From positions 1-64,000 of the IMG/VR virus record IMGVR_UViG_3300043426_000266: a stretch of 64,000 nt of DNA; one strand, given 5' to 3'. The notes beneath the pieces are model-generated. The model was not told where the DNA came from, made no database searches, and worked only from the letters and a program-made list of their open reading frames with translations. This document shows, piece by piece, positions 10,935 to 62,677 of this stretch (positions within the stretch are counted from its first letter, which is position 1; the number at the start of each line of letters is the position of its first letter). Made by a program: the position numbers and the translations under genes.

Positions 10935-12593
10935 ATGCCACAGTTTATTCTAAGCATTCCAGATGCAGAGGAAACTATTTCCTCATCAATCATTTATGGT
11001 GTGGTAACTCGTATTCTAAGAACTTTAAAGTTCTATAGAAGTGAAGACATCAACATGGTATTTTTGAGTAACTCAAACTCAACCTATGTAAAGGGATCGG
11101 ATATAGATACGCTTAGACAAGACCGTTCTCAGAATCGTCTACCAAATGACGCAAAGATCATGATTGAGGTTGATGAACGTTATAACGAAAACATGTCTCG
11201 TTCTACTGCGATTCGTGAAGGTAGCGAACAAGCAATCTTCAGATGTGACAAAACAAAAACGGTTATGCATCCTGGCTACCAGCAAATGATTTCCACAGTG
11301 AATCTAAGTCTTAAGTTTACAAATCGACATGCGGCAGAATCATTTCGACGTAAAGCGCGCGCTGCAGCAGTACAATCAGTAGACGGGATAAAGATTCAAA
11401 GCAAATATAACTACATCATTCCTTATGCATTTTTAAATGTATTAGAACATATCTATACTTTGATGGAAGCAAAACATGGTTACGGTATAACACTTGGTGA
11501 TTGGATTAGAGCGTCTTTTACCAACACGCTAACAACATTAGCCAATCAATCAGGCGGACAAACTGTACTTGCAATCGCGGAGCAACAGCAGGGTGTGCTG
11601 GTTTTATTTCAGGACTTTGATGATACGCCTAAGAAAGAGAAAGAGGGGGATCAAGATCATTGGTCAGTGGATTTAGGCTTTGAACTTTACTACGATCGTC
11701 CAGATACAATGCGTCTTTCTTTTCAACACATCATCAACAATCAAGTTATCCATCAGGATTATTTAAATCGTTTCAAGGTGCGACAACAAGAATACCTAGA
11801 AGCTAAAACAAACATTGCGTTATACGGTGCTGTTCAAGTAGGCGATCTACCCCCAAGTAAAAATTACTTATCAGGCGCGTCATCGCCAGTATTTGACGAC
11901 TGGTTACCTTCAATCTTTACTCAGTGGTTTCCCGACATTCTTCGAGTGATGCTTTTGGTGGATGAAGTTGATGTTCGTAACGTCATCAATTTAGAAGATA
12001 TCGCTGATTGGGAATTCGGAACAGCAACGCTGAATTGGTTAAAAGCAACTTATTCAACCATCGGTAAGAAATGGTTTAATATTTTTTATATCCAATTATG
12101 GGAATGGGATGTAAAACGAAGTAGTGATTTAATTACGATGGATGCTGATTTAAATATTCGTTTCTCAGAAGACTTGGATCCCCGTAAGAATTATCACTTA
12201 ACTATTGGTATCTGCGTTAACCCAACGTTACTTGATCAAAGTGTATGGGATTTACTTCAAGAGCACCCCGACTTTCTACAAGAGTATTTGGATATTATTA
12301 GTCCAGACTTAAAAGGTTGGACGTATAATCAGATCATCAACTATTGGCAGAACTGGGGTTCAACTGAATTAACCCCTTGGGATCCAGGGAACCCATTCGG
12401 CTACAACCCAGGGGATCCAGGGAACCCAGGCGGCTACAACCCAGGGTGGGGTACCTCTATCCCTCCAAGAGTCATTTCTGATTTACAAGAGTACTTAGAT
12501 GAATGGTATCGAATTCATGGGTTAAAGAAAATGACAATGAAAACAGTAATGTTCTCTGATGTACACGCGAAGAAAATAAATAGGAGAGTTTAA
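10935..12593 (+). CDS. Virion structural protein (first of a four-gene phiKZ-like baseplate cluster)
   Basis: Tightly coupled operon 10935-16038, late motif upstream, recalled phiKZ gp98-101 synteny. Confidence 0.55.
   Translation: MPQFILSIPDAEETISSSIIYGVVTRILRTLKFYRSEDINMVFLSNSNSTYVKGSDIDTLRQDRSQNRLPNDAKIMIEVDERYNENMSRSTAIREGSEQAIFRCDKTKTVMHPGYQQMISTVNLSLKFTNRHAAESFRRKARAAAVQSVDGIKIQSKYNYIIPYAFLNVLEHIYTLMEAKHGYGITLGDWIRASFTNTLTTLANQSGGQTVLAIAEQQQGVLVLFQDFDDTPKKEKEGDQDHWSVDLGFELYYDRPDTMRLSFQHIINNQVIHQDYLNRFKVRQQEYLEAKTNIALYGAVQVGDLPPSKNYLSGASSPVFDDWLPSIFTQWFPDILRVMLLVDEVDVRNVINLEDIADWEFGTATLNWLKATYSTIGKKWFNIFYIQLWEWDVKRSSDLITMDADLNIRFSEDLDPRKNYHLTIGICVNPTLLDQSVWDLLQEHPDFLQEYLDIISPDLKGWTYNQIINYWQNWGSTELTPWDPGNPFGYNPGDPGNPGGYNPGWGTSIPPRVISDLQEYLDEWYRIHGLKKMTMKTVMFSDVHAKKINRRV
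12379..12444 (+). repeat. Tandem 33-bp duplication (DPGNP.GYNPG x2)
   Basis: GGGATCCAGGGAACCCA(TT/GG)CGGCTACAACCCAG twice, 2 mismatches. Confidence 0.9.
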
Positions 12594-46145: not shown

Positions 46146-47012
46146 ATGAGTACGCAAGCTTCAAAATTCACATTCTTCTCCTTAGGGGAAGCAGCGGGGA
46201 ATTTAACCTTTGGGCAAAGAGAATTAAAAGTTATTCCAAAAGAGTCATTCTCTCAGTTAGATGGGGAGGTGACCGATGCAATGGCGGAGTTAGAAGCAGA
46301 AGGTGTTGATAAGGATGGAAATACTTATACCTCTAAGGTAGGTACTTCAAATAGTATAACCGCGACCTATTTATCCTTTGACCCTCATAAACCATTCCCG
46401 TCGCTCATCCGTCGAGGGGAGAAGGTAATTATTTATCGGTTAGCTGATACCGATAAGTACTACTGGCAACCTTTAGGTTTAGACGATACGACAAGACGAC
46501 GGGATATACTTGTTATTGCTGTTCCTAACTCTCCTAAAGAAAATGAGAATTCAAGAACACCAGAGACTGCGTATTACATTGAAGTCAATACGATTGATAA
46601 ACATATTAGTGTTCAAACCAATAAAAATGACGGTGAGCCGTTTGCCTACAGTATTCAGGTGAACACTAAAGAAGGTTTCTTTTCGGTTATGGATGATGCT
46701 GGTAATTTCATTCAACTGGTTTCTTCTGAGGATAGAATTACAACTCAAAACGCAACTGGGTCAGAAATAACAATTGAGAAAGGCAAAGGGCTGTGGAAGA
46801 CAAGTGAGTCTGTAACAATTGAAACGAAAACATTTACCGTTAAGGCCTCAAAAGCTGATTTCCAAACCCAGACATGGCAGATGAGCGGAAGCGCCTATAA
46901 TGTAAAAGCCTCTTCCGAGTTTACTGGTTCTTTGAAAAATAATGGGATTAATGTTGGTTCAACACACTACCACATCGGCAACTTAGGTCGTCCAACATCA
47001 AGTCCAATGTAG
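46146..47012 (+). CDS. Central spike / puncturing protein (phiKZ gp164-like)
   Basis: OB-fold-like N-terminus (RRGEKVII), beta-helix-like repeats, terminal THYHIG...TS.P iron-binding HxH motif; close to sbcC. Confidence 0.75.
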   Translation: MSTQASKFTFFSLGEAAGNLTFGQRELKVIPKESFSQLDGEVTDAMAELEAEGVDKDGNTYTSKVGTSNSITATYLSFDPHKPFPSLIRRGEKVIIYRLADTDKYYWQPLGLDDTTRRRDILVIAVPNSPKENENSRTPETAYYIEVNTIDKHISVQTNKNDGEPFAYSIQVNTKEGFFSVMDDAGNFIQLVSSEDRITTQNATGSEITIEKGKGLWKTSESVTIETKTFTVKASKADFQTQTWQMSGSAYNVKASSEFTGSLKNNGINVGSTHYHIGNLGRPTSSPM

Positions 47013-56175: not shown

Positions 56176-56197
56176 AGATATATATTATTTACGTGAA
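56176..56197 (+). promoter_or_regulatory. Early-promoter-like motif
   Basis: Identical to the 22-mer at 2071. Confidence 0.75.
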
Positions 56198-56222
56198 CCC
56201 GTCACTATACAAGGAAATAAAC

Positions 56223-57074
56223 ATGTCAAACCCAGAACTAACTCTTGAATCAATTACTCTTGCTACCGGTGAAACATCAGTACCTCAAGAAATCGAACGT
56301 GAACGAGCATTTGCTGAAATAAAAGAAGATGCAGATGTACAGTTAGAAGAAACTCAATTCAATCAACCCGACATTGATGGCGCAGTTCTAGAGGAGCAAG
56401 AATATGGTGTCACTGTTATTAAAATGTCCCCTGCGATTGATTCTCACAAAGAAACATTAACAGATGTTCTTGATGTGATGATGATCAATGCCGCGGCAGG
56501 TAATAGTGCTTCAATTTCAGACATTGAAAAAGATTTACTTCGTCAAACCAAAATTGATTTAAGCGAATGCACAGAACTTCTTGAAGCAATTGTATTTGGT
56601 GATACCGTTGAGTTACAAGACGCTTTGTCAGATAAGCGTGTAACATTAAACGGTTTCGCAACGTTCTTACCTATCTCATTATCTAAGAACTTCAATATCA
56701 CCCGCGACATGTTGTTTACTCGTTTTGACAAAACGATTCACGATGCTGTTCGTACTAAAGAGAAATACGCGGCAATGGGTGTCGAAACTTATATTGTCGA
56801 ATCGACTGTTGGGGATAAAGTATTTTACGCCAACAAAGTCAGCAAAGATGTGACTGGCACTAATGATGAGTTTTTCCCTGCTGACAAGTTTGTAAAATCG
56901 ATCAATTACAAGAAAGAGAACTTCTCTCCAATCGATGGTTTGTTTGATCCGACTGATACAAATGCAGTAACAGCACGTTGGAATGTTCTTCGTTCAATGT
57001 TGGAAAAGTTCATTGACGATACGGATGCTAAAGTTGCTGAGTTACTTGATCCGCCTAAAAACGAAACTATTTAA
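56223..57074 (+). CDS. MazG-like / PRA-PH-like nucleoside triphosphate pyrophosphohydrolase
   Basis: SECTELLEA...DTVELQDALSD..V..NG helix pair and KY..MGVET...KFVKSINY tail. Start moved to MSNPEL because the track GTG lies inside the promoter motif. Confidence 0.65.
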   Translation: MSNPELTLESITLATGETSVPQEIERERAFAEIKEDADVQLEETQFNQPDIDGAVLEEQEYGVTVIKMSPAIDSHKETLTDVLDVMMINAAAGNSASISDIEKDLLRQTKIDLSECTELLEAIVFGDTVELQDALSDKRVTLNGFATFLPISLSKNFNITRDMLFTRFDKTIHDAVRTKEKYAAMGVETYIVESTVGDKVFYANKVSKDVTGTNDEFFPADKFVKSINYKKENFSPIDGLFDPTDTNAVTARWNVLRSMLEKFIDDTDAKVAELLDPPKNETI

Positions 57075-57081
57075 TAATTGA

Positions 57082-57107
57082 AAGAGGGAGGGATATCCCT
57101 CCCTCTT
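57082..57107. terminator. Perfect 26-bp palindromic terminator
   Basis: AAGAGGGAGGGATATCCCTCCCTCTT. Confidence 0.8.
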
Positions 57108-57124
57108 CTTTAACCGGAGTTATC

Positions 57125-57916
57125 ATGAATGTATTTGACTTTATCAAAGAAACTACAACTGATCATCGGCTCATCAAATCAATCGCTAAAGGAACAATTG
57201 CACTTAAGAGTCAACGGTTGAGCAACGGTTATAAACTCTACATGACACTGAATGAGGCCGAAGATGAATCTATGATTACCCCAGAAGAAGCGCGTACATT
57301 TCTGGGGGATGATTTTAACTTAAAAGCGTTTACTTTAAAAGACTCTATTTCTTCACAATTGGGATTATACGAAAAGTTTAAAGAAGACGCACCATTGTAT
57401 TTTCAACTTACGCATTTTATTAGTAATTTCTTTAATCTAACACCCATTGGTTTATTTAATAGAAACCTAGATCGTTTGGATGAATTTAAGTTTCGACACG
57501 AAGATTTAACCTTAGAGGCATTATTTAATACCAATTATCGAGTTATGGGGTCGCTTTATCCAACAAGTCCGGAATATCGTTTCTACGCAACAATGCCAAT
57601 TGTCTCAGAAATCTTCAGTGGTTGTCAAACACCATTTGAAGTATTGGCACTTGCTAATCGCGTTATGAAAGATACTCATATTCTTCATGTTAAATCAATC
57701 AAGAAAGGAAATGCCAAGTTTGAGTGGTATTTACCAGATAGTGAAGGCGAGCGACGCAAATTACTCAAACGTAAATCCACCGTTGACATTGGTGTTGGGG
57801 AGTACTTTTCTTTAAAAGATATTATCATTAAGTTTGGTAAATCTGCACCACAACATTCTTCTGTTCCAATTTATACAACTGACGTTCTTAATTCTTTATC
57901 GGAGTTAATGACATGA
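57125..57916 (+). CDS. Hypothetical protein
   Basis: 263 aa, GGAG RBS. Confidence 0.7.
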   Translation: MNVFDFIKETTTDHRLIKSIAKGTIALKSQRLSNGYKLYMTLNEAEDESMITPEEARTFLGDDFNLKAFTLKDSISSQLGLYEKFKEDAPLYFQLTHFISNFFNLTPIGLFNRNLDRLDEFKFRHEDLTLEALFNTNYRVMGSLYPTSPEYRFYATMPIVSEIFSGCQTPFEVLALANRVMKDTHILHVKSIKKGNAKFEWYLPDSEGERRKLLKRKSTVDIGVGEYFSLKDIIIKFGKSAPQHSSVPIYTTDVLNSLSELMT

Positions 57917-58650
57917 TTCAAATAGGACTTTCCTTATTAGATCAAGCTCATGTGGATATCGCTGCCCAAAATATTCAAAGGTTACTAGGTGATTTAAAAC
58001 TCTCTGATATAAGCTTTGAAGAATTTATGGTGGCCTCATTAGATCCAACGAACATTTGCAATCAGGTTATGGATTTAAATGTCTCTCAGATGGTTAATGA
58101 AAACGTGATTGTTAACTGGGATATCCCACATGAGAAAAGTATTCGTTATCTGATTGACTCAATCTCTATGCTCATTTATAACCGTTTGAGTAATAGTAAC
58201 TCGGGTGTTAGACGACTCTGGACAGAAGTTTTTCTTCTAGAAGCATTTAAATACCACCCTGCACAATTAGCAATAATTGCCGCGCCACATCACACACCTT
58301 ATTCGCTTATTGTTGGAGAACAGTATTCCTACTGGGAACCAATGGAAGAAGATACTTTCTTCATTGTAGATGAATCTGTAAACATTAATGACCTCGTAGA
58401 ACAGGAGGAAAACAAACAACTACAAGCTTTTGTTGAAATCTTTAACACATGGGAACCATTAGAACGTGAGCTTGTGGTGAGGATGTTAAACAAAGCTTTG
58501 CGGTGTAAAACACTTTTAGGGTTGCTCACAACCATCAGAGACTCTATATGTCTTAAATGGATGCAGGGTACCCTAAAACATAAGGTTGAATTCAAATCCC
58601 ATAATCTGGTGTTTGCAATTGCCTTTACAACCATCAAAAACATAATTTAG
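57913..58650 (+). CDS. Hypothetical protein
   Basis: ATGA overlap. Confidence 0.7.
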   Translation: MIQIGLSLLDQAHVDIAAQNIQRLLGDLKLSDISFEEFMVASLDPTNICNQVMDLNVSQMVNENVIVNWDIPHEKSIRYLIDSISMLIYNRLSNSNSGVRRLWTEVFLLEAFKYHPAQLAIIAAPHHTPYSLIVGEQYSYWEPMEEDTFFIVDESVNINDLVEQEENKQLQAFVEIFNTWEPLERELVVRMLNKALRCKTLLGLLTTIRDSICLKWMQGTLKHKVEFKSHNLVFAIAFTTIKNII

Positions 58651-58658
58651 GAGCTAAC

Positions 58659-59510
58659 ATGACTTCTCATATCGAAGTTGCTTTAGGTACGTTTCCCGAG
58701 CTCGTGGATGTATTCACAAACGAGTTATTGGGAAATGATATTAATCAGCAGCGTAAAGAAAAACTTATCAGTAAACTTGAAAAAATCAACATACCATGGG
58801 TAGTAATGACAAGCAATATTTACCTACCATCCGCAGGGACAAATTGCCAATATGACGACGAATGGGGTTCACCAAATATTGGAACTCCAAACCCTGTTAC
58901 AGACTACTTGAAAAAGCAATATCGTAAAGTTGGAATTAAAGATGGTACGTTGTTAGTTAGCGGGTTACTTGAAACGGTAAGTCAACTTGATGATGATACA
59001 AAAGTCTTCAAAACCGCTATCCATGTTTTTAGTCACTGGTGGGATTTACCTAGTCAGATTCTTCAACCTTGGCGGGTCTGCCGAATCCCAACGACTTATC
59101 TTCACTATAGAAATGTAGATGGGATTAATGTCGCTGGAATTGATAAATTAAATAGCCTTGCCGATTTAATTGAGCTTGCGAAACTCTATAAAACAGATAA
59201 AGCGGAAGGCATCGCCCAGCATGAAGCGGGTGTTTCTACTTACATTAAATCTCCAGCAATGCGCGCAATATGTAATGTGTTGAACCATATCACCCATGTT
59301 CGCCAATTCAATCGTTTTGCCAAATTCCTGGTGGGTGATGATTTTATTACTGAATTAAAAGATAGTTTACAAAAAAGCGAAATCAGCAAAGCTCAATTGG
59401 AAGAAGAGTTTGAATCCGTTTTGGATACCATTCATGCTGGATTATTTCATACTTCAGTTGATATTCGCCAATTCACTTACCTACGTCTCATTGATTTGTT
59501 GTTGGGATAG
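58659..59510 (+). CDS. Hypothetical protein
   Basis: AGGAG RBS. Confidence 0.7.
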   Translation: MTSHIEVALGTFPELVDVFTNELLGNDINQQRKEKLISKLEKINIPWVVMTSNIYLPSAGTNCQYDDEWGSPNIGTPNPVTDYLKKQYRKVGIKDGTLLVSGLLETVSQLDDDTKVFKTAIHVFSHWWDLPSQILQPWRVCRIPTTYLHYRNVDGINVAGIDKLNSLADLIELAKLYKTDKAEGIAQHEAGVSTYIKSPAMRAICNVLNHITHVRQFNRFAKFLVGDDFITELKDSLQKSEISKAQLEEEFESVLDTIHAGLFHTSVDIRQFTYLRLIDLLLG

Positions 59511-59519
59511 GAGATATTC

Positions 59520-60347
59520 ATGACTTATAGTATTAATGACCTTACCGTGCCTGAGGTAATTGTTTCCCATACCTGGGTCGATAAGACTGAGTTTAGTTTA
59601 CCTAACTATGCTTTTTGGCAAGCAATCACCAATATTTGTACGTCGTTCAACTCGAGTTTTCAAAATGTAGAAAACACGTATCGAGCACATACTGGTGTTA
59701 GTAAGGATACACCATTGATCTTTTTAAAATGGTTCGATGAGATTAGGTTTAGACGATTCCGGGATCGGGTTGCGGATTTATCCAATTTTCAACAGAAAGA
59801 TGATAATGTAGCAAATGCATATATTCAACTTACTATAGATATCTTTATGGATGATCTAACCGCCATTCAAAAGCTTTCTTTGCTATATGCATTGTATAAC
59901 GGGTACTATGGTCGATTGAATGGGTTTCGCCCGGTTTACAAAAGAGGCGGGATGATTGGTTTCACTCGATGCAATTCTGTGGGTTTAACGATCGAAGAGA
60001 TTAATGAAAAACTTGGAACCGCCGAGTTTATCAAAGATCATTCTGAGTTGTCTGGTTTATTTTCAACCTACAAAACAATGAGCCCAATCATTCAAAAGAA
60101 ACACCCGGAAGTAATTGAAGCAACAGATATTGTTTTAAGACAACTTTTAAATTGCAATGATATCCAAACTGGTTTCCAAGCAATCTTGGATTATCTTAAA
60201 ATCGTGACACCCCATCGTGCTGAACGTAAAAGTGACTCTATTGTCATGGTTTATAAGTTAGACTGTGATTGTCACCTGAATGATCCAAACATTGCAATTG
60301 CAATGATCAAACACTGTTTAGTTGAGTTATACAGTATATCTATCTAA
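59520..60347 (+). CDS. Hypothetical protein
   Basis: AGGAG RBS. Confidence 0.7.
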   Translation: MTYSINDLTVPEVIVSHTWVDKTEFSLPNYAFWQAITNICTSFNSSFQNVENTYRAHTGVSKDTPLIFLKWFDEIRFRRFRDRVADLSNFQQKDDNVANAYIQLTIDIFMDDLTAIQKLSLLYALYNGYYGRLNGFRPVYKRGGMIGFTRCNSVGLTIEEINEKLGTAEFIKDHSELSGLFSTYKTMSPIIQKKHPEVIEATDIVLRQLLNCNDIQTGFQAILDYLKIVTPHRAERKSDSIVMVYKLDCDCHLNDPNIAIAMIKHCLVELYSISI

Positions 60348-60353
60348 TTAATC

Positions 60354-60379
60354 TAAGGAGCTTCGGCTCCTTATTTTTT
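60354..60379 (+). terminator. UUCG-loop terminator
   Basis: TAAGGAGC-TTCG-GCTCCTTA plus T tail. Confidence 0.85.
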
Positions 60380-60391
60380 GTTCATGTTTTT

Positions 60392-60940
60392 ATGGTTATG
60401 AAATTGGAGTTAGACATGACAAATAGTAATGAATTAAAGTGGCTTGCACGATATAGAACTCTAGTTGGATTCTTGGTCAATCGTTTTGATAAAGTAAACC
60501 CTATTTTTATCAGCTATATAAATAAAGCATTTAAAGAATCTAAACTGCGGCCTATTTTAATTACCGTTGACTCTTCTTTGTCTGGTGCTCTTCTGGGTGG
60601 TGTGTTTACCTCAGTTGGGATGAGTGGGAAGATTCCGCGTACGTTCTATCGTATAAAAGACTGGCTAGACGCGGGGATTGTTATTAACTCAGCCGCATAT
60701 GGGTGCATTGCTGTTATTAAAACAGAGCAACTAGAATGTGTAGGTATTGTTGTTGGACAAACTTCAAAAGGGTTGATTAAAGTACTTGGTATTCATAGTG
60801 AAGGTGTCGTAAGTATCGAAGACTATAATTTAACGGACATCCTCGGTTATCGCTGGGTTGGAGAAACTAAGACTCCATCTTTATATCGTTACGACTTGCC
60901 TGTGCTAAAACCGGGTTCAATCAAAACTAAATTACCTTAA
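60392..60940 (+). CDS. TIGR02594-like (NlpC/P60-related) protein, catalytically degenerate
   Basis: AYGCIAV...VG.VVG...G...VLG....V.I..Y....ILGYRW...RYDLPVL pattern. Confidence 0.6.
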   Translation: MVMKLELDMTNSNELKWLARYRTLVGFLVNRFDKVNPIFISYINKAFKESKLRPILITVDSSLSGALLGGVFTSVGMSGKIPRTFYRIKDWLDAGIVINSAAYGCIAVIKTEQLECVGIVVGQTSKGLIKVLGIHSEGVVSIEDYNLTDILGYRWVGETKTPSLYRYDLPVLKPGSIKTKLP

Positions 60941-60941
60941 A

Positions 60942-60969
60942 TAAAAGAGAGGCGATCGCCTCTCTTTTA
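60942..60969. terminator. Perfect 28-bp palindromic terminator
   Basis: TAAAAGAGAGGCGATCGCCTCTCTTTTA. Confidence 0.85.
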
Positions 60970-60988
60970 AGTTATGCGCATATTTAAA

Positions 60989-61012
60989 AAGGAGGGGTGT
61001 TAACCCCTCCTT
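60989..61012 (-). terminator. Terminator for the minus-strand operon
   Basis: AAGGAGGGG-TGTTAA-CCCCTCCTT with an upstream A run. Confidence 0.7.
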
Positions 61013-61013
61013 A

Positions 61014-61352
61014 TCACTTTACATCATTATAAACTTCTTTTAACTTAGCAGCAATTCGCATTACCTTTTGAGTAAACGCCGCCTCATCTGGGATGATAAA
61101 ATAACGTTTAGTAATCTCCTCAAGTAAACGATGGAGTTTTACGTTACCTTTACATTTTTGCTGACTATATTCTTTTTCAATCTCATCCATGATAGATGCG
61201 ATCATATACAATAAACCTCGATCTCGAGTATCATCGATAGTAATTCGAATAACCTCATCTTGAATGATTTCTTTTACATCATCAGGCGTGTTTTCAATAT
61301 CATTACTAACTTTGACTATAACGTCGACGATATCCTTAATTTGGATATTCAT
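61014..61352 (-). CDS. Hypothetical protein
   Basis: 112 aa, last gene of the minus-strand operon. Confidence 0.65.
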   Translation of the reverse strand: MNIQIKDIVDVIVKVSNDIENTPDDVKEIIQDEVIRITIDDTRDRGLLYMIASIMDEIEKEYSQQKCKGNVKLHRLLEEITKRYFIIPDEAAFTQKVMRIAAKLKEVYNDVK

Positions 61353-61357
61353 AAGCG

Positions 61358-62146
61358 TTACGCCGCAGAGTGTTCAGTTACAATACAGCGAACAATAGTG
61401 TGTGAATCGTCTGGAGCAAACGTTGTAAGAGTAGTGAATTCTGTATTTAGACCAATTATAGGACCTGTTGGTAGAATTTCAGACCATTCGTCAGAAGTAT
61501 CTCCAATCCGCGGTAAGGTAAACTGAACACTCATATCTTCACCACCGCCTCTGGCATAGTCGAGCATACCCACATTTACAATTGTGTATTGGTAGATACC
61601 ATCAGCTGAGATGTGTTGGTAACCTTGAACAAAATGCAGTTGAGGTTGAGTAGGTGCTGTTAAGTTAATAAAACTGTTATTCAGCGCATCGCGAACATCA
61701 TCACACGATTGGTTTTTGTCAGCACCTAATAATGTTACTTTAAAATAATGACGAAGTGCACAACTACCTGCATCTACCTCACCTTCGTAATAACCAAGAG
61801 AGGTCTCCTTAACTTTTACTTGGAGACCGTCTAAGTAAACGTCATCTGTAGTTACATCGTGACCGTCGATGTTCATTAGTTCAATTACACGCGCTATACC
61901 ACCTTCATCACCCATATAGTTTCCTAAGGTGGGACGAAGGTCAACGCGATTATAAATTAATACTCGTTCTTCTTGAATTCCATTCTCTTCAATAATCGCT
62001 ACAGTTTTTGTATTATAAACATCATATTCCAACTCTTCAACCGAAATAACTTCAATTGCTTTAGCGGTTGGGGATAAGATATCTTTTAACCCCCGATTTT
62101 TTACTGCGTCAGTTTTAATACTGTGTCGTAATTGCGGCATCAACAT
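61358..62146 (-). CDS. Putative virion structural protein, MPQLR/YNRVD/SLGYY paralog family
   Basis: N-terminal half aligns by eye with 5406-6287. Confidence 0.6.
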   Translation of the reverse strand: MLMPQLRHSIKTDAVKNRGLKDILSPTAKAIEVISVEELEYDVYNTKTVAIIEENGIQEERVLIYNRVDLRPTLGNYMGDEGGIARVIELMNIDGHDVTTDDVYLDGLQVKVKETSLGYYEGEVDAGSCALRHYFKVTLLGADKNQSCDDVRDALNNSFINLTAPTQPQLHFVQGYQHISADGIYQYTIVNVGMLDYARGGGEDMSVQFTLPRIGDTSDEWSEILPTGPIIGLNTEFTTLTTFAPDDSHTIVRCIVTEHSAA

Positions 62147-62155
62147 ATCGTACTC

Positions 62156-62677
62156 CTAGTTTGAAAAAGCAACTACTGTAAAAGAGTAGTTACCATCTTG
62201 GTCAAGAACGGGTCTTTTTACAGTCATTTTTAAATTACCCTTTTCGGCAACTCGAATAGATGAATAATTTTCTTCATCAGCCGTCCAAAGGATAAATTTA
62301 AATTTATCCTTATACCACTCTAATGTCTGTAAAGCGATGCCTTGACCTCGAGCGTCTTCGCTCACGTAGATACCACTTAACCGATAATAATCGTTTAGCG
62401 GAGATAGCATGTTAATATCATATTCTTCAGGTGTAACTTTTCTAGGAAAGCTTAGTGCAACTAATTTGTTGTCTTCATTATAAACTTTTAAGAATCCTAA
62501 TAAATCAAAACCATTTTTATTTTTACTCTTGCTTGACTCATATAAACGATTACGAGTTTGCTCAATCGTATAAGATTTACCAATTGTTCTACCTTCATTA
62601 GTAAACGTAGTAGATAACGAATCATGGTACATCTTTACTACGTCTTCATCATATTCAAAATCAATTTTAAATTCCAT
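62156..62677 (-). CDS. GNAT-family acetyltransferase
   Basis: LSGIYVSEDARGQGIA acetyl-CoA motif A and N.SSIRVAEK.N motif B. Confidence 0.85.
   Translation of the reverse strand: MEFKIDFEYDEDVVKMYHDSLSTTFTNEGRTIGKSYTIEQTRNRLYESSKSKNKNGFDLLGFLKVYNEDNKLVALSFPRKVTPEEYDINMLSPLNDYYRLSGIYVSEDARGQGIALQTLEWYKDKFKFILWTADEENYSSIRVAEKGNLKMTVKRPVLDQDGNYSFTVVAFSN

What the first reader, a model, noticed from the sequence alone, without database searches (positions are those of the whole stretch)
60392..60940. Catalytically dead TIGR02594-like cell-wall amidase homolog
From memory, the family pattern is PWC(A/G)AFVG...PAYGCIAV...GGGHV..VVG...VLGGNQ...GYRWP...YDLP. This protein keeps the scaffold, but WC is replaced by LS (Ser64, 60581), the catalytic His by Cys (Cys116, 60737), and GGNQ by GIHS. 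An intact ORF with all catalytic positions changed suggests repurposing, for example as a peptidoglycan-fragment binder, a lysis modulator or a dominant-negative inhibitor of host or competing-phage enzymes.
Basis: partly seen in the sequence, partly recalled or inferred. Interest (0 to 1): 0.6.

Follow-up and report, generated by a model that had tools for sequence, protein, structure and literature searches.

The report
Catalytically dead CHAP lysin homolog
An uncultivated giant (phiKZ-like) phage keeps, under purifying selection, a copy of a cell-wall-cutting endolysin in which every cutting residue has been replaced; it probably now binds rather than cuts, and such dead copies are already known in a few bacteria and phages.

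Summary
The ORF is a real relative of TIGR02594/CHAP cell-wall peptidases: NCBIfam E 1.8e-8, phmmer down to 5.5e-28 against canonical members, AF2 model pLDDT 89.8, NlpC/P60 fold Z 11.5.

Positions nearly invariant in 127 canonical members are all changed: W63-C64 to L-S, G115-H116 to E-C, G134-N135-Q136 to I-H-S. So are R111, H35, E29 and the C-terminal NEA.

This is a lineage, not a one-off. Four syntenic orthologues (43-55% identical) share Ser64 and Glu115 and lack the His. They form one clade (support 100) nested among Acinetobacter-phage endolysins. dN/dS is 0.08-0.35.

A swapped Cys116/His135 dyad is not conserved; orthologues carry K/D, K/H or R/D.

The true start is probably ATG 60416 (174 aa). 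The gene is a single-gene unit between hairpins, behind an invariant TTTTTATG that resembles phiKZ late promoters. The same motif precedes the phage's real endolysin candidate, an N-acetylmuramidase at 126.7 kb. A giant virion protein carries a VanY/M15 domain.

Best reading: a pseudoenzyme kept for a late, non-catalytic binding role. This is a new member of a known kind (RipD; phage 812 clip domain). The function is untested.

The parts
60354..60373 (+). Terminator hairpin (UUCG loop followed by a T-run) that ends the upstream five-gene unit
   Evidence: Terminator scan. Folds at -12.1 kcal/mol, z -4.3. Stem is invariant in all orthologous loci.
60387..60394 (+). Invariant TTTTTATG, a candidate phiKZ-type late promoter (TATG with the start site at G)
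   Evidence: Invariant in 5 loci while flanking bases vary. 22 copies on the + strand, 14 of them intergenic (p 1.5e-11), against 1-3 intergenic for permuted 8-mers. Also precedes baseplate gene 46146 and the muramidase gene at 126690. phiKZ late consensus from PMC4666361.
60392..60415 (+).
   Evidence: Orthologues lack them. Residues 1-8 have pLDDT below 50.
60406..60409 (+). Shine-Dalgarno GGAG, 6 nt before ATG 60416
   Evidence: Sequence. Invariant in the alignment of orthologous upstream regions.
60416..60940 (+). Probable true coding sequence: 174-aa CHAP/TIGR02594-fold protein without the catalytic triad
60578..60586 (+). L63-S64-G65, replacing the family's W-C-G (nucleophile Cys at the N-terminus of helix 64-74)
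60734..60739 (+). E115-C116, replacing the family's G-H (catalytic His at the start of strand 115-123). Glu115 is invariant in the dead clade.
60788..60799 (+). G133-I134-H135-S136, replacing the family's G-G-N-Q (third triad residue Asn135)
60942..60969 (+). 12-bp hairpin directly after the stop codon; probable terminator of the single-gene unit, with a weak T tract
   Evidence: Folds at -18.0 kcal/mol, z -6.1. Population variants fall in its loop and upper stem.

Best explanation
The gene encodes a pseudoenzyme. It is a free-standing CHAP (peptidase C51, TIGR02594 subfamily) domain that descends from a phage endolysin lineage. It has lost the Cys-His-Asn triad and most other conserved polar residues of the active-site region.

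A clade of uncultivated phiKZ-like jumbo phages from fresh water and wastewater nevertheless keeps it under purifying selection. It sits there as a separate single-gene unit that is probably transcribed late.

Two other proteins appear to cover cell-wall cleavage in this phage. One is a stand-alone N-acetylmuramidase, the probable endolysin. The other is a VanY/M15 peptidase domain inside a 2961-aa protein, which I take to be the virion entry lysin.

I infer that the dead domain works by binding, not cutting. My preferred mechanism is a late-made adaptor or structural module that binds a protein partner or the cell wall at the tail tip or during lysis. The inactive CHAP 'clip' domain of the Staphylococcus phage 812 baseplate weld protein and RipD of M. 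tuberculosis work this way.

Shown: homology, fold, loss of the conserved residues, one evolutionary origin, synteny, selection, and the presence of other lysins. Inferred: inactivity, late timing, and any binding role. For the kind of role, my rough split is virion or protein-binding 0.35, wall-binding lysis accessory 0.25, other non-catalytic role 0.4.
For: - Homology and fold: TIGR02594 E 1.8e-8; phmmer hits to canonical CHAP proteins down to 5.5e-28; AF2 pLDDT 89.8; NlpC/P60 and CHAP structures at Z 8-11.5, including non-catalytic RipD at Z 10.1; viral CHAP, TIGR02594 and tail-lysozyme models.
- Loss of function-defining residues: W63, C64, G115, H116, G134, N135 and Q136 are each 125-127/127 in canonical members and are replaced in all four lineages.
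- Of 59 positions at least 90% conserved in the family, 18 are lost in all four lineages, while Gly, Pro and aromatic scaffold positions are kept.
- Canonical members match Pfam CHAP end to end; none of the four dead ones gives any Pfam hit.
- One origin: the dead clade has SH-aLRT 100 on a stem of 1.1 substitutions per site. It is nested (support 97) with Acinetobacter phages At2 and Ab1-TPeters.
- The relatives are endolysins: the At2 homologue is followed by an Rz-like spanin, and phage SCUT-S4 has holin-endolysin-Rz-Rz1.
- Retention: the syntenic position is the same in every lineage for which flanks are held.
- Selection: dN/dS is 0.13-0.35 between lineages, with dS saturated, and 0.08-0.21 within one lineage, unsaturated. 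Natural variants in the window's lineage are 4 synonymous plus I119V, while the upstream gene differs by about 3%.
- Residues 116/135 are C/H, K/D, K/H and R/D, a polar or salt-bridge filler rather than a conserved dyad.
- Expression unit: conserved terminator, TTTTTATG, GGAG and ATG. Motif statistics are and the phiKZ late-promoter consensus.
- Other lysins: PF11860 muramidase at 123 bits, G000:126690-127418, also behind TTTTTATG. VanY domain at 26 bits in ORF 92511-101396.
- Precedents.
Against: - No activity, binding or expression data exist. All holders are DNA or ambiguous metagenomic libraries.
- Ser64 and Glu115 are invariant in the clade, so a re-tooled catalytic centre cannot be excluded.
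- Only four lineages are known, so site-wise selection tests have little power.
- Late timing rests on a short motif and on analogy with phiKZ.
- The genome record is only about 70% complete.
- Loss of pocket residues such as R111 and H35 argues against retention of canonical muropeptide binding, so the ligand is unknown.
Confidence: 0.7

Rival explanations
1. It is still a hydrolase with a re-tooled active site. Ser64 would replace Cys as nucleophile and be activated by clade-invariant Glu115, with residue 135 (His or Asp) or Lys/Arg116 assisting. That would give a Ser-Glu-Asp/His or Ser-Lys arrangement in a papain-like fold.
For: Ser64 and Glu115 are invariant in all four lineages, while the family has Cys and an invariant Gly there. 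Residue 135 is always His or Asp. The scaffold and basic pI (9.2-9.6, against a family median of 9.5) are retained.
Against: - No single dyad or triad is conserved: residue 116 is C/K/K/R and residue 135 is H/D/H/D.
- Other near-invariant polar residues around the site are lost (R111, H35, E29, R149, C-terminal NEA).
- Glu115 is the residue immediately before position 116 on the same strand, so its side chain would normally point away from residue 64. This is an inference from the secondary structure.
- The phage already has a muramidase and an M15 domain.
Confidence: 0.12
2. It is a specific antagonist or timer of cell-wall hydrolases. Examples would be a dominant-negative competitor of rival phage or host CHAP enzymes, or a modulator of the phage's own muramidase.
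For: It shares the TTTTTATG element with the muramidase gene. Descent from an endolysin would give it the right shape to compete for wall sites.
Against: It is not adjacent to holin, spanin or endolysin genes. The substrate-pocket residues are lost, which weakens competition for the substrate. There is no signal peptide or TM segment in the sequence. A co-fold with the muramidase gave no verdict, which is not evidence either way.
Confidence: 0.1
3. It is a decaying endolysin remnant with no function, made redundant by the muramidase and still open by chance.
For: The stem branch is long and the window's own terminal branch is the longest in the clade at 0.77. It is among the less conserved genes of its neighbourhood: 49% identity against 42-78% for neighbours.
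Against: The frame is open in four lineages that are 43-62% identical. dN/dS is 0.08-0.35. There are 4 synonymous to 1 conservative change in populations, and divergence is lower than in the neighbouring gene. Promoter-like motif, SD and start are conserved. 53 residues are invariant across the clade.
Confidence: 0.05

Closest known systems
Canonical TIGR02594 / CHAP (Pfam PF05257, peptidase C51) phage endolysins, e.g. Pseudomonas phage vB_PaeS_SCUT-S4 endolysin (AZF90070.1), Acinetobacter phage At2 XLQ30918.1, Ab1-TPeters XTJ53702.1
   Same: Same length class (about 170-180 aa, single domain) and same fold. Shared scaffold motifs are AYGC, VG.VVG, YRW and RY.LP.L. pI is basic. The window protein is 26-39% identical and nests phylogenetically inside this family.
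   Different: Canonical members keep WCG, GGGHV and GGNQ and match the CHAP HMM end to end. They sit in lysis cassettes with holin and/or spanin. The window protein has none of these features.
RipD (Rv1566c) of Mycobacterium tuberculosis, a non-catalytic NlpC/P60 domain (PDB 4jxb, 4lj1)
   Same: NlpC/P60-type fold with altered catalytic residues and no hydrolase activity; described as adapted to peptidoglycan binding. Structural match Z 10.1, rmsd 3.5 A over 115 residues.
   Different: RipD is a bacterial secreted protein of a different NlpC/P60 subfamily with a C-terminal repeat tail. There is no detectable sequence relationship. Whether the phage protein binds peptidoglycan is unknown.
Clip domain of the baseplate weld protein of Staphylococcus phage 812 (PMC13433997)
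   Same: A phage-encoded CHAP fold that lacks the catalytic Cys-His-Glu. [quoted passage not shown]
   Different: It is one domain of a larger baseplate protein in a Gram-positive Kayvirus and is seen in the virion by cryo-EM. The window protein is free-standing, lies outside the tail gene block, and its virion membership is untested.
Degenerate LytM factors EnvC and NlpD (from general knowledge, not tested here)
   Same: Cell-wall hydrolase folds that have lost catalytic residues and act through protein binding, by activating amidases.
   Different: Different fold (M23 metallopeptidase), bacterial and periplasmic. No evidence here for an activator role.

Membership tests
NCBIfam TIGR02594 | Whole-protein HMM score at or above the curated cut-off (70.55 bits) | tested here: not met
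   34.7 bits, E 1.8e-8; only profile positions 46-132 of 132 align.
NCBIfam TIGR02594 | Phylogenetic position inside the family | tested here: met
   The dead clade is nested with support 97 among canonical members.
CHAP domain (Pfam PF05257, peptidase C51) | Match to the Pfam model | tested here: not met
   No Pfam hit at E up to 10 for the window protein or at E up to 1 for its three orthologues. Canonical relatives match positions 2-81 of 81.
CHAP domain (Pfam PF05257, peptidase C51) | Nucleophile Cys at the N-terminus of the first core helix | tested here: not met
   Ser64 at the start of helix 64-74; the family has Cys in 126/127.
CHAP domain (Pfam PF05257, peptidase C51) | Catalytic His at the start of the central strand, plus a polar third residue on the next strand | tested here: not met
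   Cys116 where the family has His in 126/127; His135 where the family has Asn in 127/127.
CHAP domain (Pfam PF05257, peptidase C51) | Papain-like alpha+beta NlpC/P60/CHAP fold | tested here: met
   pLDDT 89.8. Z 11.5 to 4xcm_B, and 47 chains at Z 8 or more; all of those shown are NlpC/P60 or CHAP entries.
Non-catalytic NlpC/P60-CHAP pseudoenzymes (RipD, phage 812 clip domain) | Fold retained with catalytic residues replaced | tested here: met
Non-catalytic NlpC/P60-CHAP pseudoenzymes (RipD, phage 812 clip domain) | Maintained by selection rather than decaying | tested here: met
   dN/dS 0.08-0.35; four syntenic lineages.
Non-catalytic NlpC/P60-CHAP pseudoenzymes (RipD, phage 812 clip domain) | No peptidoglycan hydrolase activity | not testable with these tools
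   Needs a zymogram or muropeptide analysis.
Non-catalytic NlpC/P60-CHAP pseudoenzymes (RipD, phage 812 clip domain) | Binds peptidoglycan or a defined protein partner | not testable with these tools
   The one co-fold tried, with the muramidase, gave no verdict.
Phage endolysin (functional class) | Placement in a lysis cassette with holin and/or spanin | tested here: not met
   The neighbours have no lysis-family hits. The gene is flanked by hairpins and a convergent block.
phiKZ-type late gene | TATG motif at the transcript start, upstream of the gene | tested here: met
   Invariant TTTTTATG 22 nt before the ATG, enriched in intergenic DNA.
phiKZ-type late gene | Late transcript observed | not testable with these tools
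   No run on record as RNA; only contigs were laid.

The most novel reading that the evidence does not exclude
The clade-invariant Ser64 and Glu115, together with Asp or His at position 135, form a new catalytic centre. The protein would then be a CHAP-fold cell-wall hydrolase that has switched from Cys-His-Asn to a Ser-Glu-(Asp/His) mechanism, like that of sedolisins. It would be a previously undescribed catalytic type in the NlpC/P60-CHAP superfamily, not a dead enzyme.
Probability: 0.08. Interest if true: 0.75.

Novelty: new member of a known kind. Interest (0 to 1): 0.35.

Why it matters
Pseudoenzymes derived from cell-wall hydrolases are known, but few have been followed in phages. Here a complete, free-standing endolysin domain has been stripped of its catalytic and pocket residues. 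A jumbo-phage clade has then kept it for a long time, with its own probable late promoter, beside an intact muramidase and a virion peptidase.

It is a clean natural case for asking what a lysin fold is good for once it cannot cut: binding, adaptor or regulatory roles. It also warns against annotating such genes as 'endolysin' or 'tail lysozyme' from fold or PHROG matches alone.

The practical payoff is modest unless the protein turns out to have a new activity or a defined partner.

Tried and rejected
- Single-sequence AF2 fold: useless, pLDDT 33.6. Replaced by the alignment-based model.
- Sequence searches of the PDB with the 5- and 132-sequence profiles: no hit at E up to 1 and up to 10 respectively. 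The triad was therefore mapped from family invariants, the Pfam CHAP span and secondary structure, not from a solved homologue.
- Model coordinates are not exposed, so no distances between residues 64, 115, 116 and 135 could be measured.
- Swapped Cys116/His135 dyad: rejected as a conserved mechanism.
- Cys105 (the AYGC motif) as an alternative nucleophile: it is conserved in active and dead members alike. From strand topology I infer that it lies at the far end of the hairpin from the active site.
- Megablast of the locus against isolated phages: no match.
- IMG/VR scans with the protein and with the clade alignment: no further members.
- The JGI metagenome scan added only two loci of the P0003 lineage.
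- P0032, a 2974-aa hit of the big search: unrelated to this genome.
- Window against L006 dN/dS: only 3 differences, uninformative.
- Genome scans for SLT, PG_binding_1, Phage_lysozyme, GH19, M23, Amidase_2, CHAP, GH108 and NLPC_P60: nothing found.
- Complex prediction, dead CHAP against the muramidase: no verdict, score 0.00. This is no evidence for or against binding.
- Possible joint in run X6 that skips the gene: this is a divergent relative aligned only at conserved flanks, with the sequence in between unknown. It cannot be read as a deletion.

Full report
**1. What is there**

Window 60392..60940 (+) is an intact 182-codon ORF. The window is the first 64 kb of a 205,063-bp IMG/VR virus record, about 70% complete, with 38% GC.

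The phage is a distant phiKZ-like jumbo phage:
- A 741-aa virion protein matches Ralstonia RP12/RSF1 and Erwinia Deimos-Minion-type phages at about 26% identity.
- The window also holds a phiKZ-type major head protein, a virion structural protein and an RNA-polymerase-like subunit.
- It holds baseplate and tail-fibre genes, SbcC and an NAD-dependent ligase.

Near-identical DNA occurs in freshwater, wastewater and seawater metagenomes from 11 studies.

**2. Homology and fold**

Sequence evidence:
- NCBIfam TIGR02594 matches at E 1.8e-8. The score (34.7 bits) is below the cut-off of 70.55, and only the C-terminal two thirds of the profile align.
- Pfam gives nothing. PHROG 1259 matches at E 1.4e-6.
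- tblastn finds 95 phage records, many annotated as endolysins next to holins.
- The exhaustive phmmer search finds 44 representatives.
- A profile word search shows a family of more than 7,600 proteins, most of which carry Pfam CHAP.

Structural evidence:
- With a 132-sequence alignment the AF2 model is confident: pLDDT 89.8, pTM 0.87, with residues 1-8 disordered.
- It aligns to NlpC/P60 and CHAP structures with Z 8-11.5. These include MepS, LytE, RipA/B, LysK CHAP, Tse1 and the non-catalytic RipD at Z 10.1.
- It also matches viral CHAP, TIGR02594 and tail-lysozyme models, and the ESM Atlas look-up agrees.

**3. The substitutions**

Counts among 127 canonical members:

| Position | Canonical residue (count of 127) | Four dead-clade lineages |
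|---|---|---|
| 59 | D (124) | V/T/D/K |
| 63 | W (127) | L/I/I/I |
| 64 | C (126) | S (all four) |
| 111 | R (127) | T/T/C/K |
| 115 | G (126) | E (all four) |
| 116 | H (126) | C/K/K/R |
| 134 | G (126) | I/A/A/A |
| 135 | N (127) | H/D/H/D |
| 136 | Q (125) | S/Q/H/Q |

The first residue listed in each row is the window protein's.

- Residue 64 opens helix 64-74. Residue 116 is the second residue of strand 115-123. Residue 135 follows strand 129-134. This is the expected placement of a papain-like Cys-His-polar triad.
- Of the 59 positions at least 90% conserved in the family, the four lineages keep 20 in all, keep 21 in part and have lost 18. The lost ones include E29, H35, R111, R149 and the C-terminal S-x-N-E-A. 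The kept ones are mostly Gly, Pro and aromatic scaffold residues.
- Canonical members hit Pfam CHAP end to end; none of the four altered proteins does.

**4. A lineage, not an accident**

Besides a 99% identical copy (L006), three further lineages exist: P0047 (55% identical), P0003 (49%) and P0048 (43%). Two more loci belong to the P0003 lineage.

- All loci with flanks are syntenic: a 276-aa ORF lies upstream, and 113-aa and roughly 270-aa ORFs converge from downstream.
- The four lineages form one clade (SH-aLRT 100) on a long stem of 1.1 substitutions per site. The clade is nested with support 97 among canonical enzymes that include Acinetobacter phages At2 and Ab1-TPeters.
- The At2 gene is followed by an Rz-like spanin, so the ancestor was very probably an endolysin.

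**5. Selection**

- Between lineages, dN/dS is 0.13-0.35 with dS saturated, so these values are upper bounds.
- Within the P0003 lineage, where dS is 0.06-0.07, dN/dS is 0.08-0.21.
- In wastewater and seawater contigs of the window's own lineage, the gene carries four synonymous changes and one conservative change (I119V). The upstream gene differs at about 3% of sites.
- Neighbouring proteins are 42-78% identical between the two best-sampled lineages, against 49% for this one. It evolves fairly fast but is clearly constrained.
- 53 residues are invariant across the clade. Several of them are clade-specific: N44, D90, E115, T124, K130, E158, T159, S163, K180 and L181.

**6. Is a swapped active site plausible?**

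- The Cys116/His135 pair sits where His116 and Asn135 contact each other in active members. It is private to the window's lineage; the others have K/D, K/H and R/D. That pattern looks like a polar or salt-bridge filler.
- Ser64 and Glu115 are invariant, so a Ser-based mechanism cannot be excluded. However, no common general base exists, and the surrounding conserved polar residues are gone.
- I could not measure geometry because coordinates are not exposed.

**7. Expression unit**

- All orthologues begin at the ATG that aligns with 60416. A GGAG lies 6 nt upstream of it.
- The upstream region is more conserved than the coding sequence. It holds a terminator hairpin at 60354-60373 (-12.1 kcal/mol), a T-run, and then an invariant TTTTTATG at 60387-60394.
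- phiKZ late promoters are defined by TATG with transcription starting at the G (PMC4666361; PMC7598289).
- In this genome TTTTTATG occurs 22 times on the + strand, 14 of them in the 7% of DNA that is intergenic (p 1.5e-11). Permuted 8-mers give 1-3 intergenic copies.
- The motif precedes, at similar spacing, the baseplate gene at 46146, the ORFs at 10935 and 21445, and the muramidase gene.
- A different 20-nt AT-rich motif (AGATATATATTATTTACGTGAA-like) occurs 13-14 times against 1.7 expected, with no copy (at most one) on the - strand. It fits the description of jumbo-phage early promoters. Copies at 56181 and 62735 bracket the locus.
- The five ORFs from 56193 to 60347 therefore look like an early unit that ends at the hairpin. 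The target looks like a separate late unit closed by its own hairpin at 60942-60969 (-18.0 kcal/mol).
- All timing statements are inference. No RNA run is on record.

**8. Other lysins in the genome**

- Scans of the 205 kb found no SLT, PG_binding_1, T4/lambda-type lysozyme, GH19, M23, Amidase_2, GH108, NLPC_P60 or second CHAP.
- They did find a 242-aa N-acetylmuramidase (PF11860, 123 bits) at 126690-127418, which is the probable endolysin.
- They also found a VanY/M15 peptidase domain (26 bits, plus endolysin PHROGs) near the C-terminus of a 2961-aa ORF at 92511-101396. I infer that this is the virion entry lysin.
- Cell-wall cleavage therefore does not need the dead CHAP protein.

**9. Interpretation**

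The best-supported reading is a pseudoenzyme. An endolysin-derived CHAP domain has been relieved of catalysis and retained for a non-catalytic role, made late in infection.

Known parallels:
- RipD, a non-catalytic NlpC/P60 domain.

Because the pocket residues are lost along with the triad, I favour a protein-binding or altered-ligand role over a simple muropeptide trap. This is inference. A co-fold with the muramidase returned no verdict.

**10. Verdict**

- The specific function is unknown and testable.
- Novelty: a new member of a known kind. Interest is moderate to low (0.35).

Noticed in passing
window 2076, 7308, 27609, 50770, 56181, 62735 (+ strand; further copies beyond 64 kb): A roughly 20-nt AT-rich motif (AAATAAAA-n-AGATATATATTATTTAC[G/A]TGAA) occurs 13-14 times against 1.7 expected, with no copy (at most one) on the - strand, upstream of gene blocks. 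It fits the description of jumbo-phage early (virion RNA polymerase) promoters.
   Followed up: partly
window 10904, 18362, 21416, 46117, 60387; G000 126669, 145103: A recurring layout: terminator hairpin, T-run, TTTTTATG, about 20 nt, SD, ATG. It stands before the baseplate gene, the muramidase and other genes, and is a probable late-promoter class.
   Followed up: partly
G000:C1:126690-127418 (+), outside the window (L012:1294-2022): A 242-aa protein with a PF11860 N-acetylmuramidase domain (123 bits) and a roughly 65-aa N-terminal extension. It is the phage's probable endolysin.
   Followed up: partly
G000:C1:92511-101396 (+), outside the window (L011): A giant 2961-aa ORF with a VanY/M15 peptidase domain near its C-terminus and endolysin PHROG matches. 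It is probably a virion-borne cell-wall-digesting protein.
   Followed up: partly
Proteins P0004 (484 aa) and P0010, from the representative search; not in the window: In P0004, a canonical TIGR02594/CHAP lysin appears interrupted by a roughly 310-aa insert exactly at the catalytic Cys. Residues 1-55 form the N-terminal part, the insert begins with Cys56 and ends ...VVGN365, and Cys366-Gly-Ser-Phe resumes the CHAP domain. That is an intein-like signature, though no Pfam intein hit was found. P0010 (156 aa) looks like the 3' portion of a similar gene: it starts inside a matching insert tail and resumes at ...TGN|CG.
   Followed up: partly
window 60345-60390: In wastewater run X6 the hairpin AAGGAGCTTCGGCTCCTT plus its T-run is shared by several otherwise unrelated contigs (depth 30-56 against 5). 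It is a terminator cassette reused across loci or phages.
   Followed up: no
window 60284-61348: One 1.7-kb contig of run X6 aligns only to flanking pieces (60355-60379, 61000-61078, 61348-61400) at about 82-90% identity. It is a divergent relative whose content at the position of the gene could not be read.
   Followed up: no
window 58659-60347: The two genes just upstream (283 and 275 aa, no family hits) evolve fast. They are 50% and 42% identical between lineages. The second gene differs at about 3% of sites between natural populations; both differ about 4% from locus L006.
   Followed up: no
window 61014-62677 (- strand): A three-gene block runs convergent to the mostly + strand genome. 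It includes a GNAT-type acetyltransferase-like ORF (62156-62677), is conserved in the sister lineage, and has its own terminator hairpin at 60985-61016.
   Followed up: no
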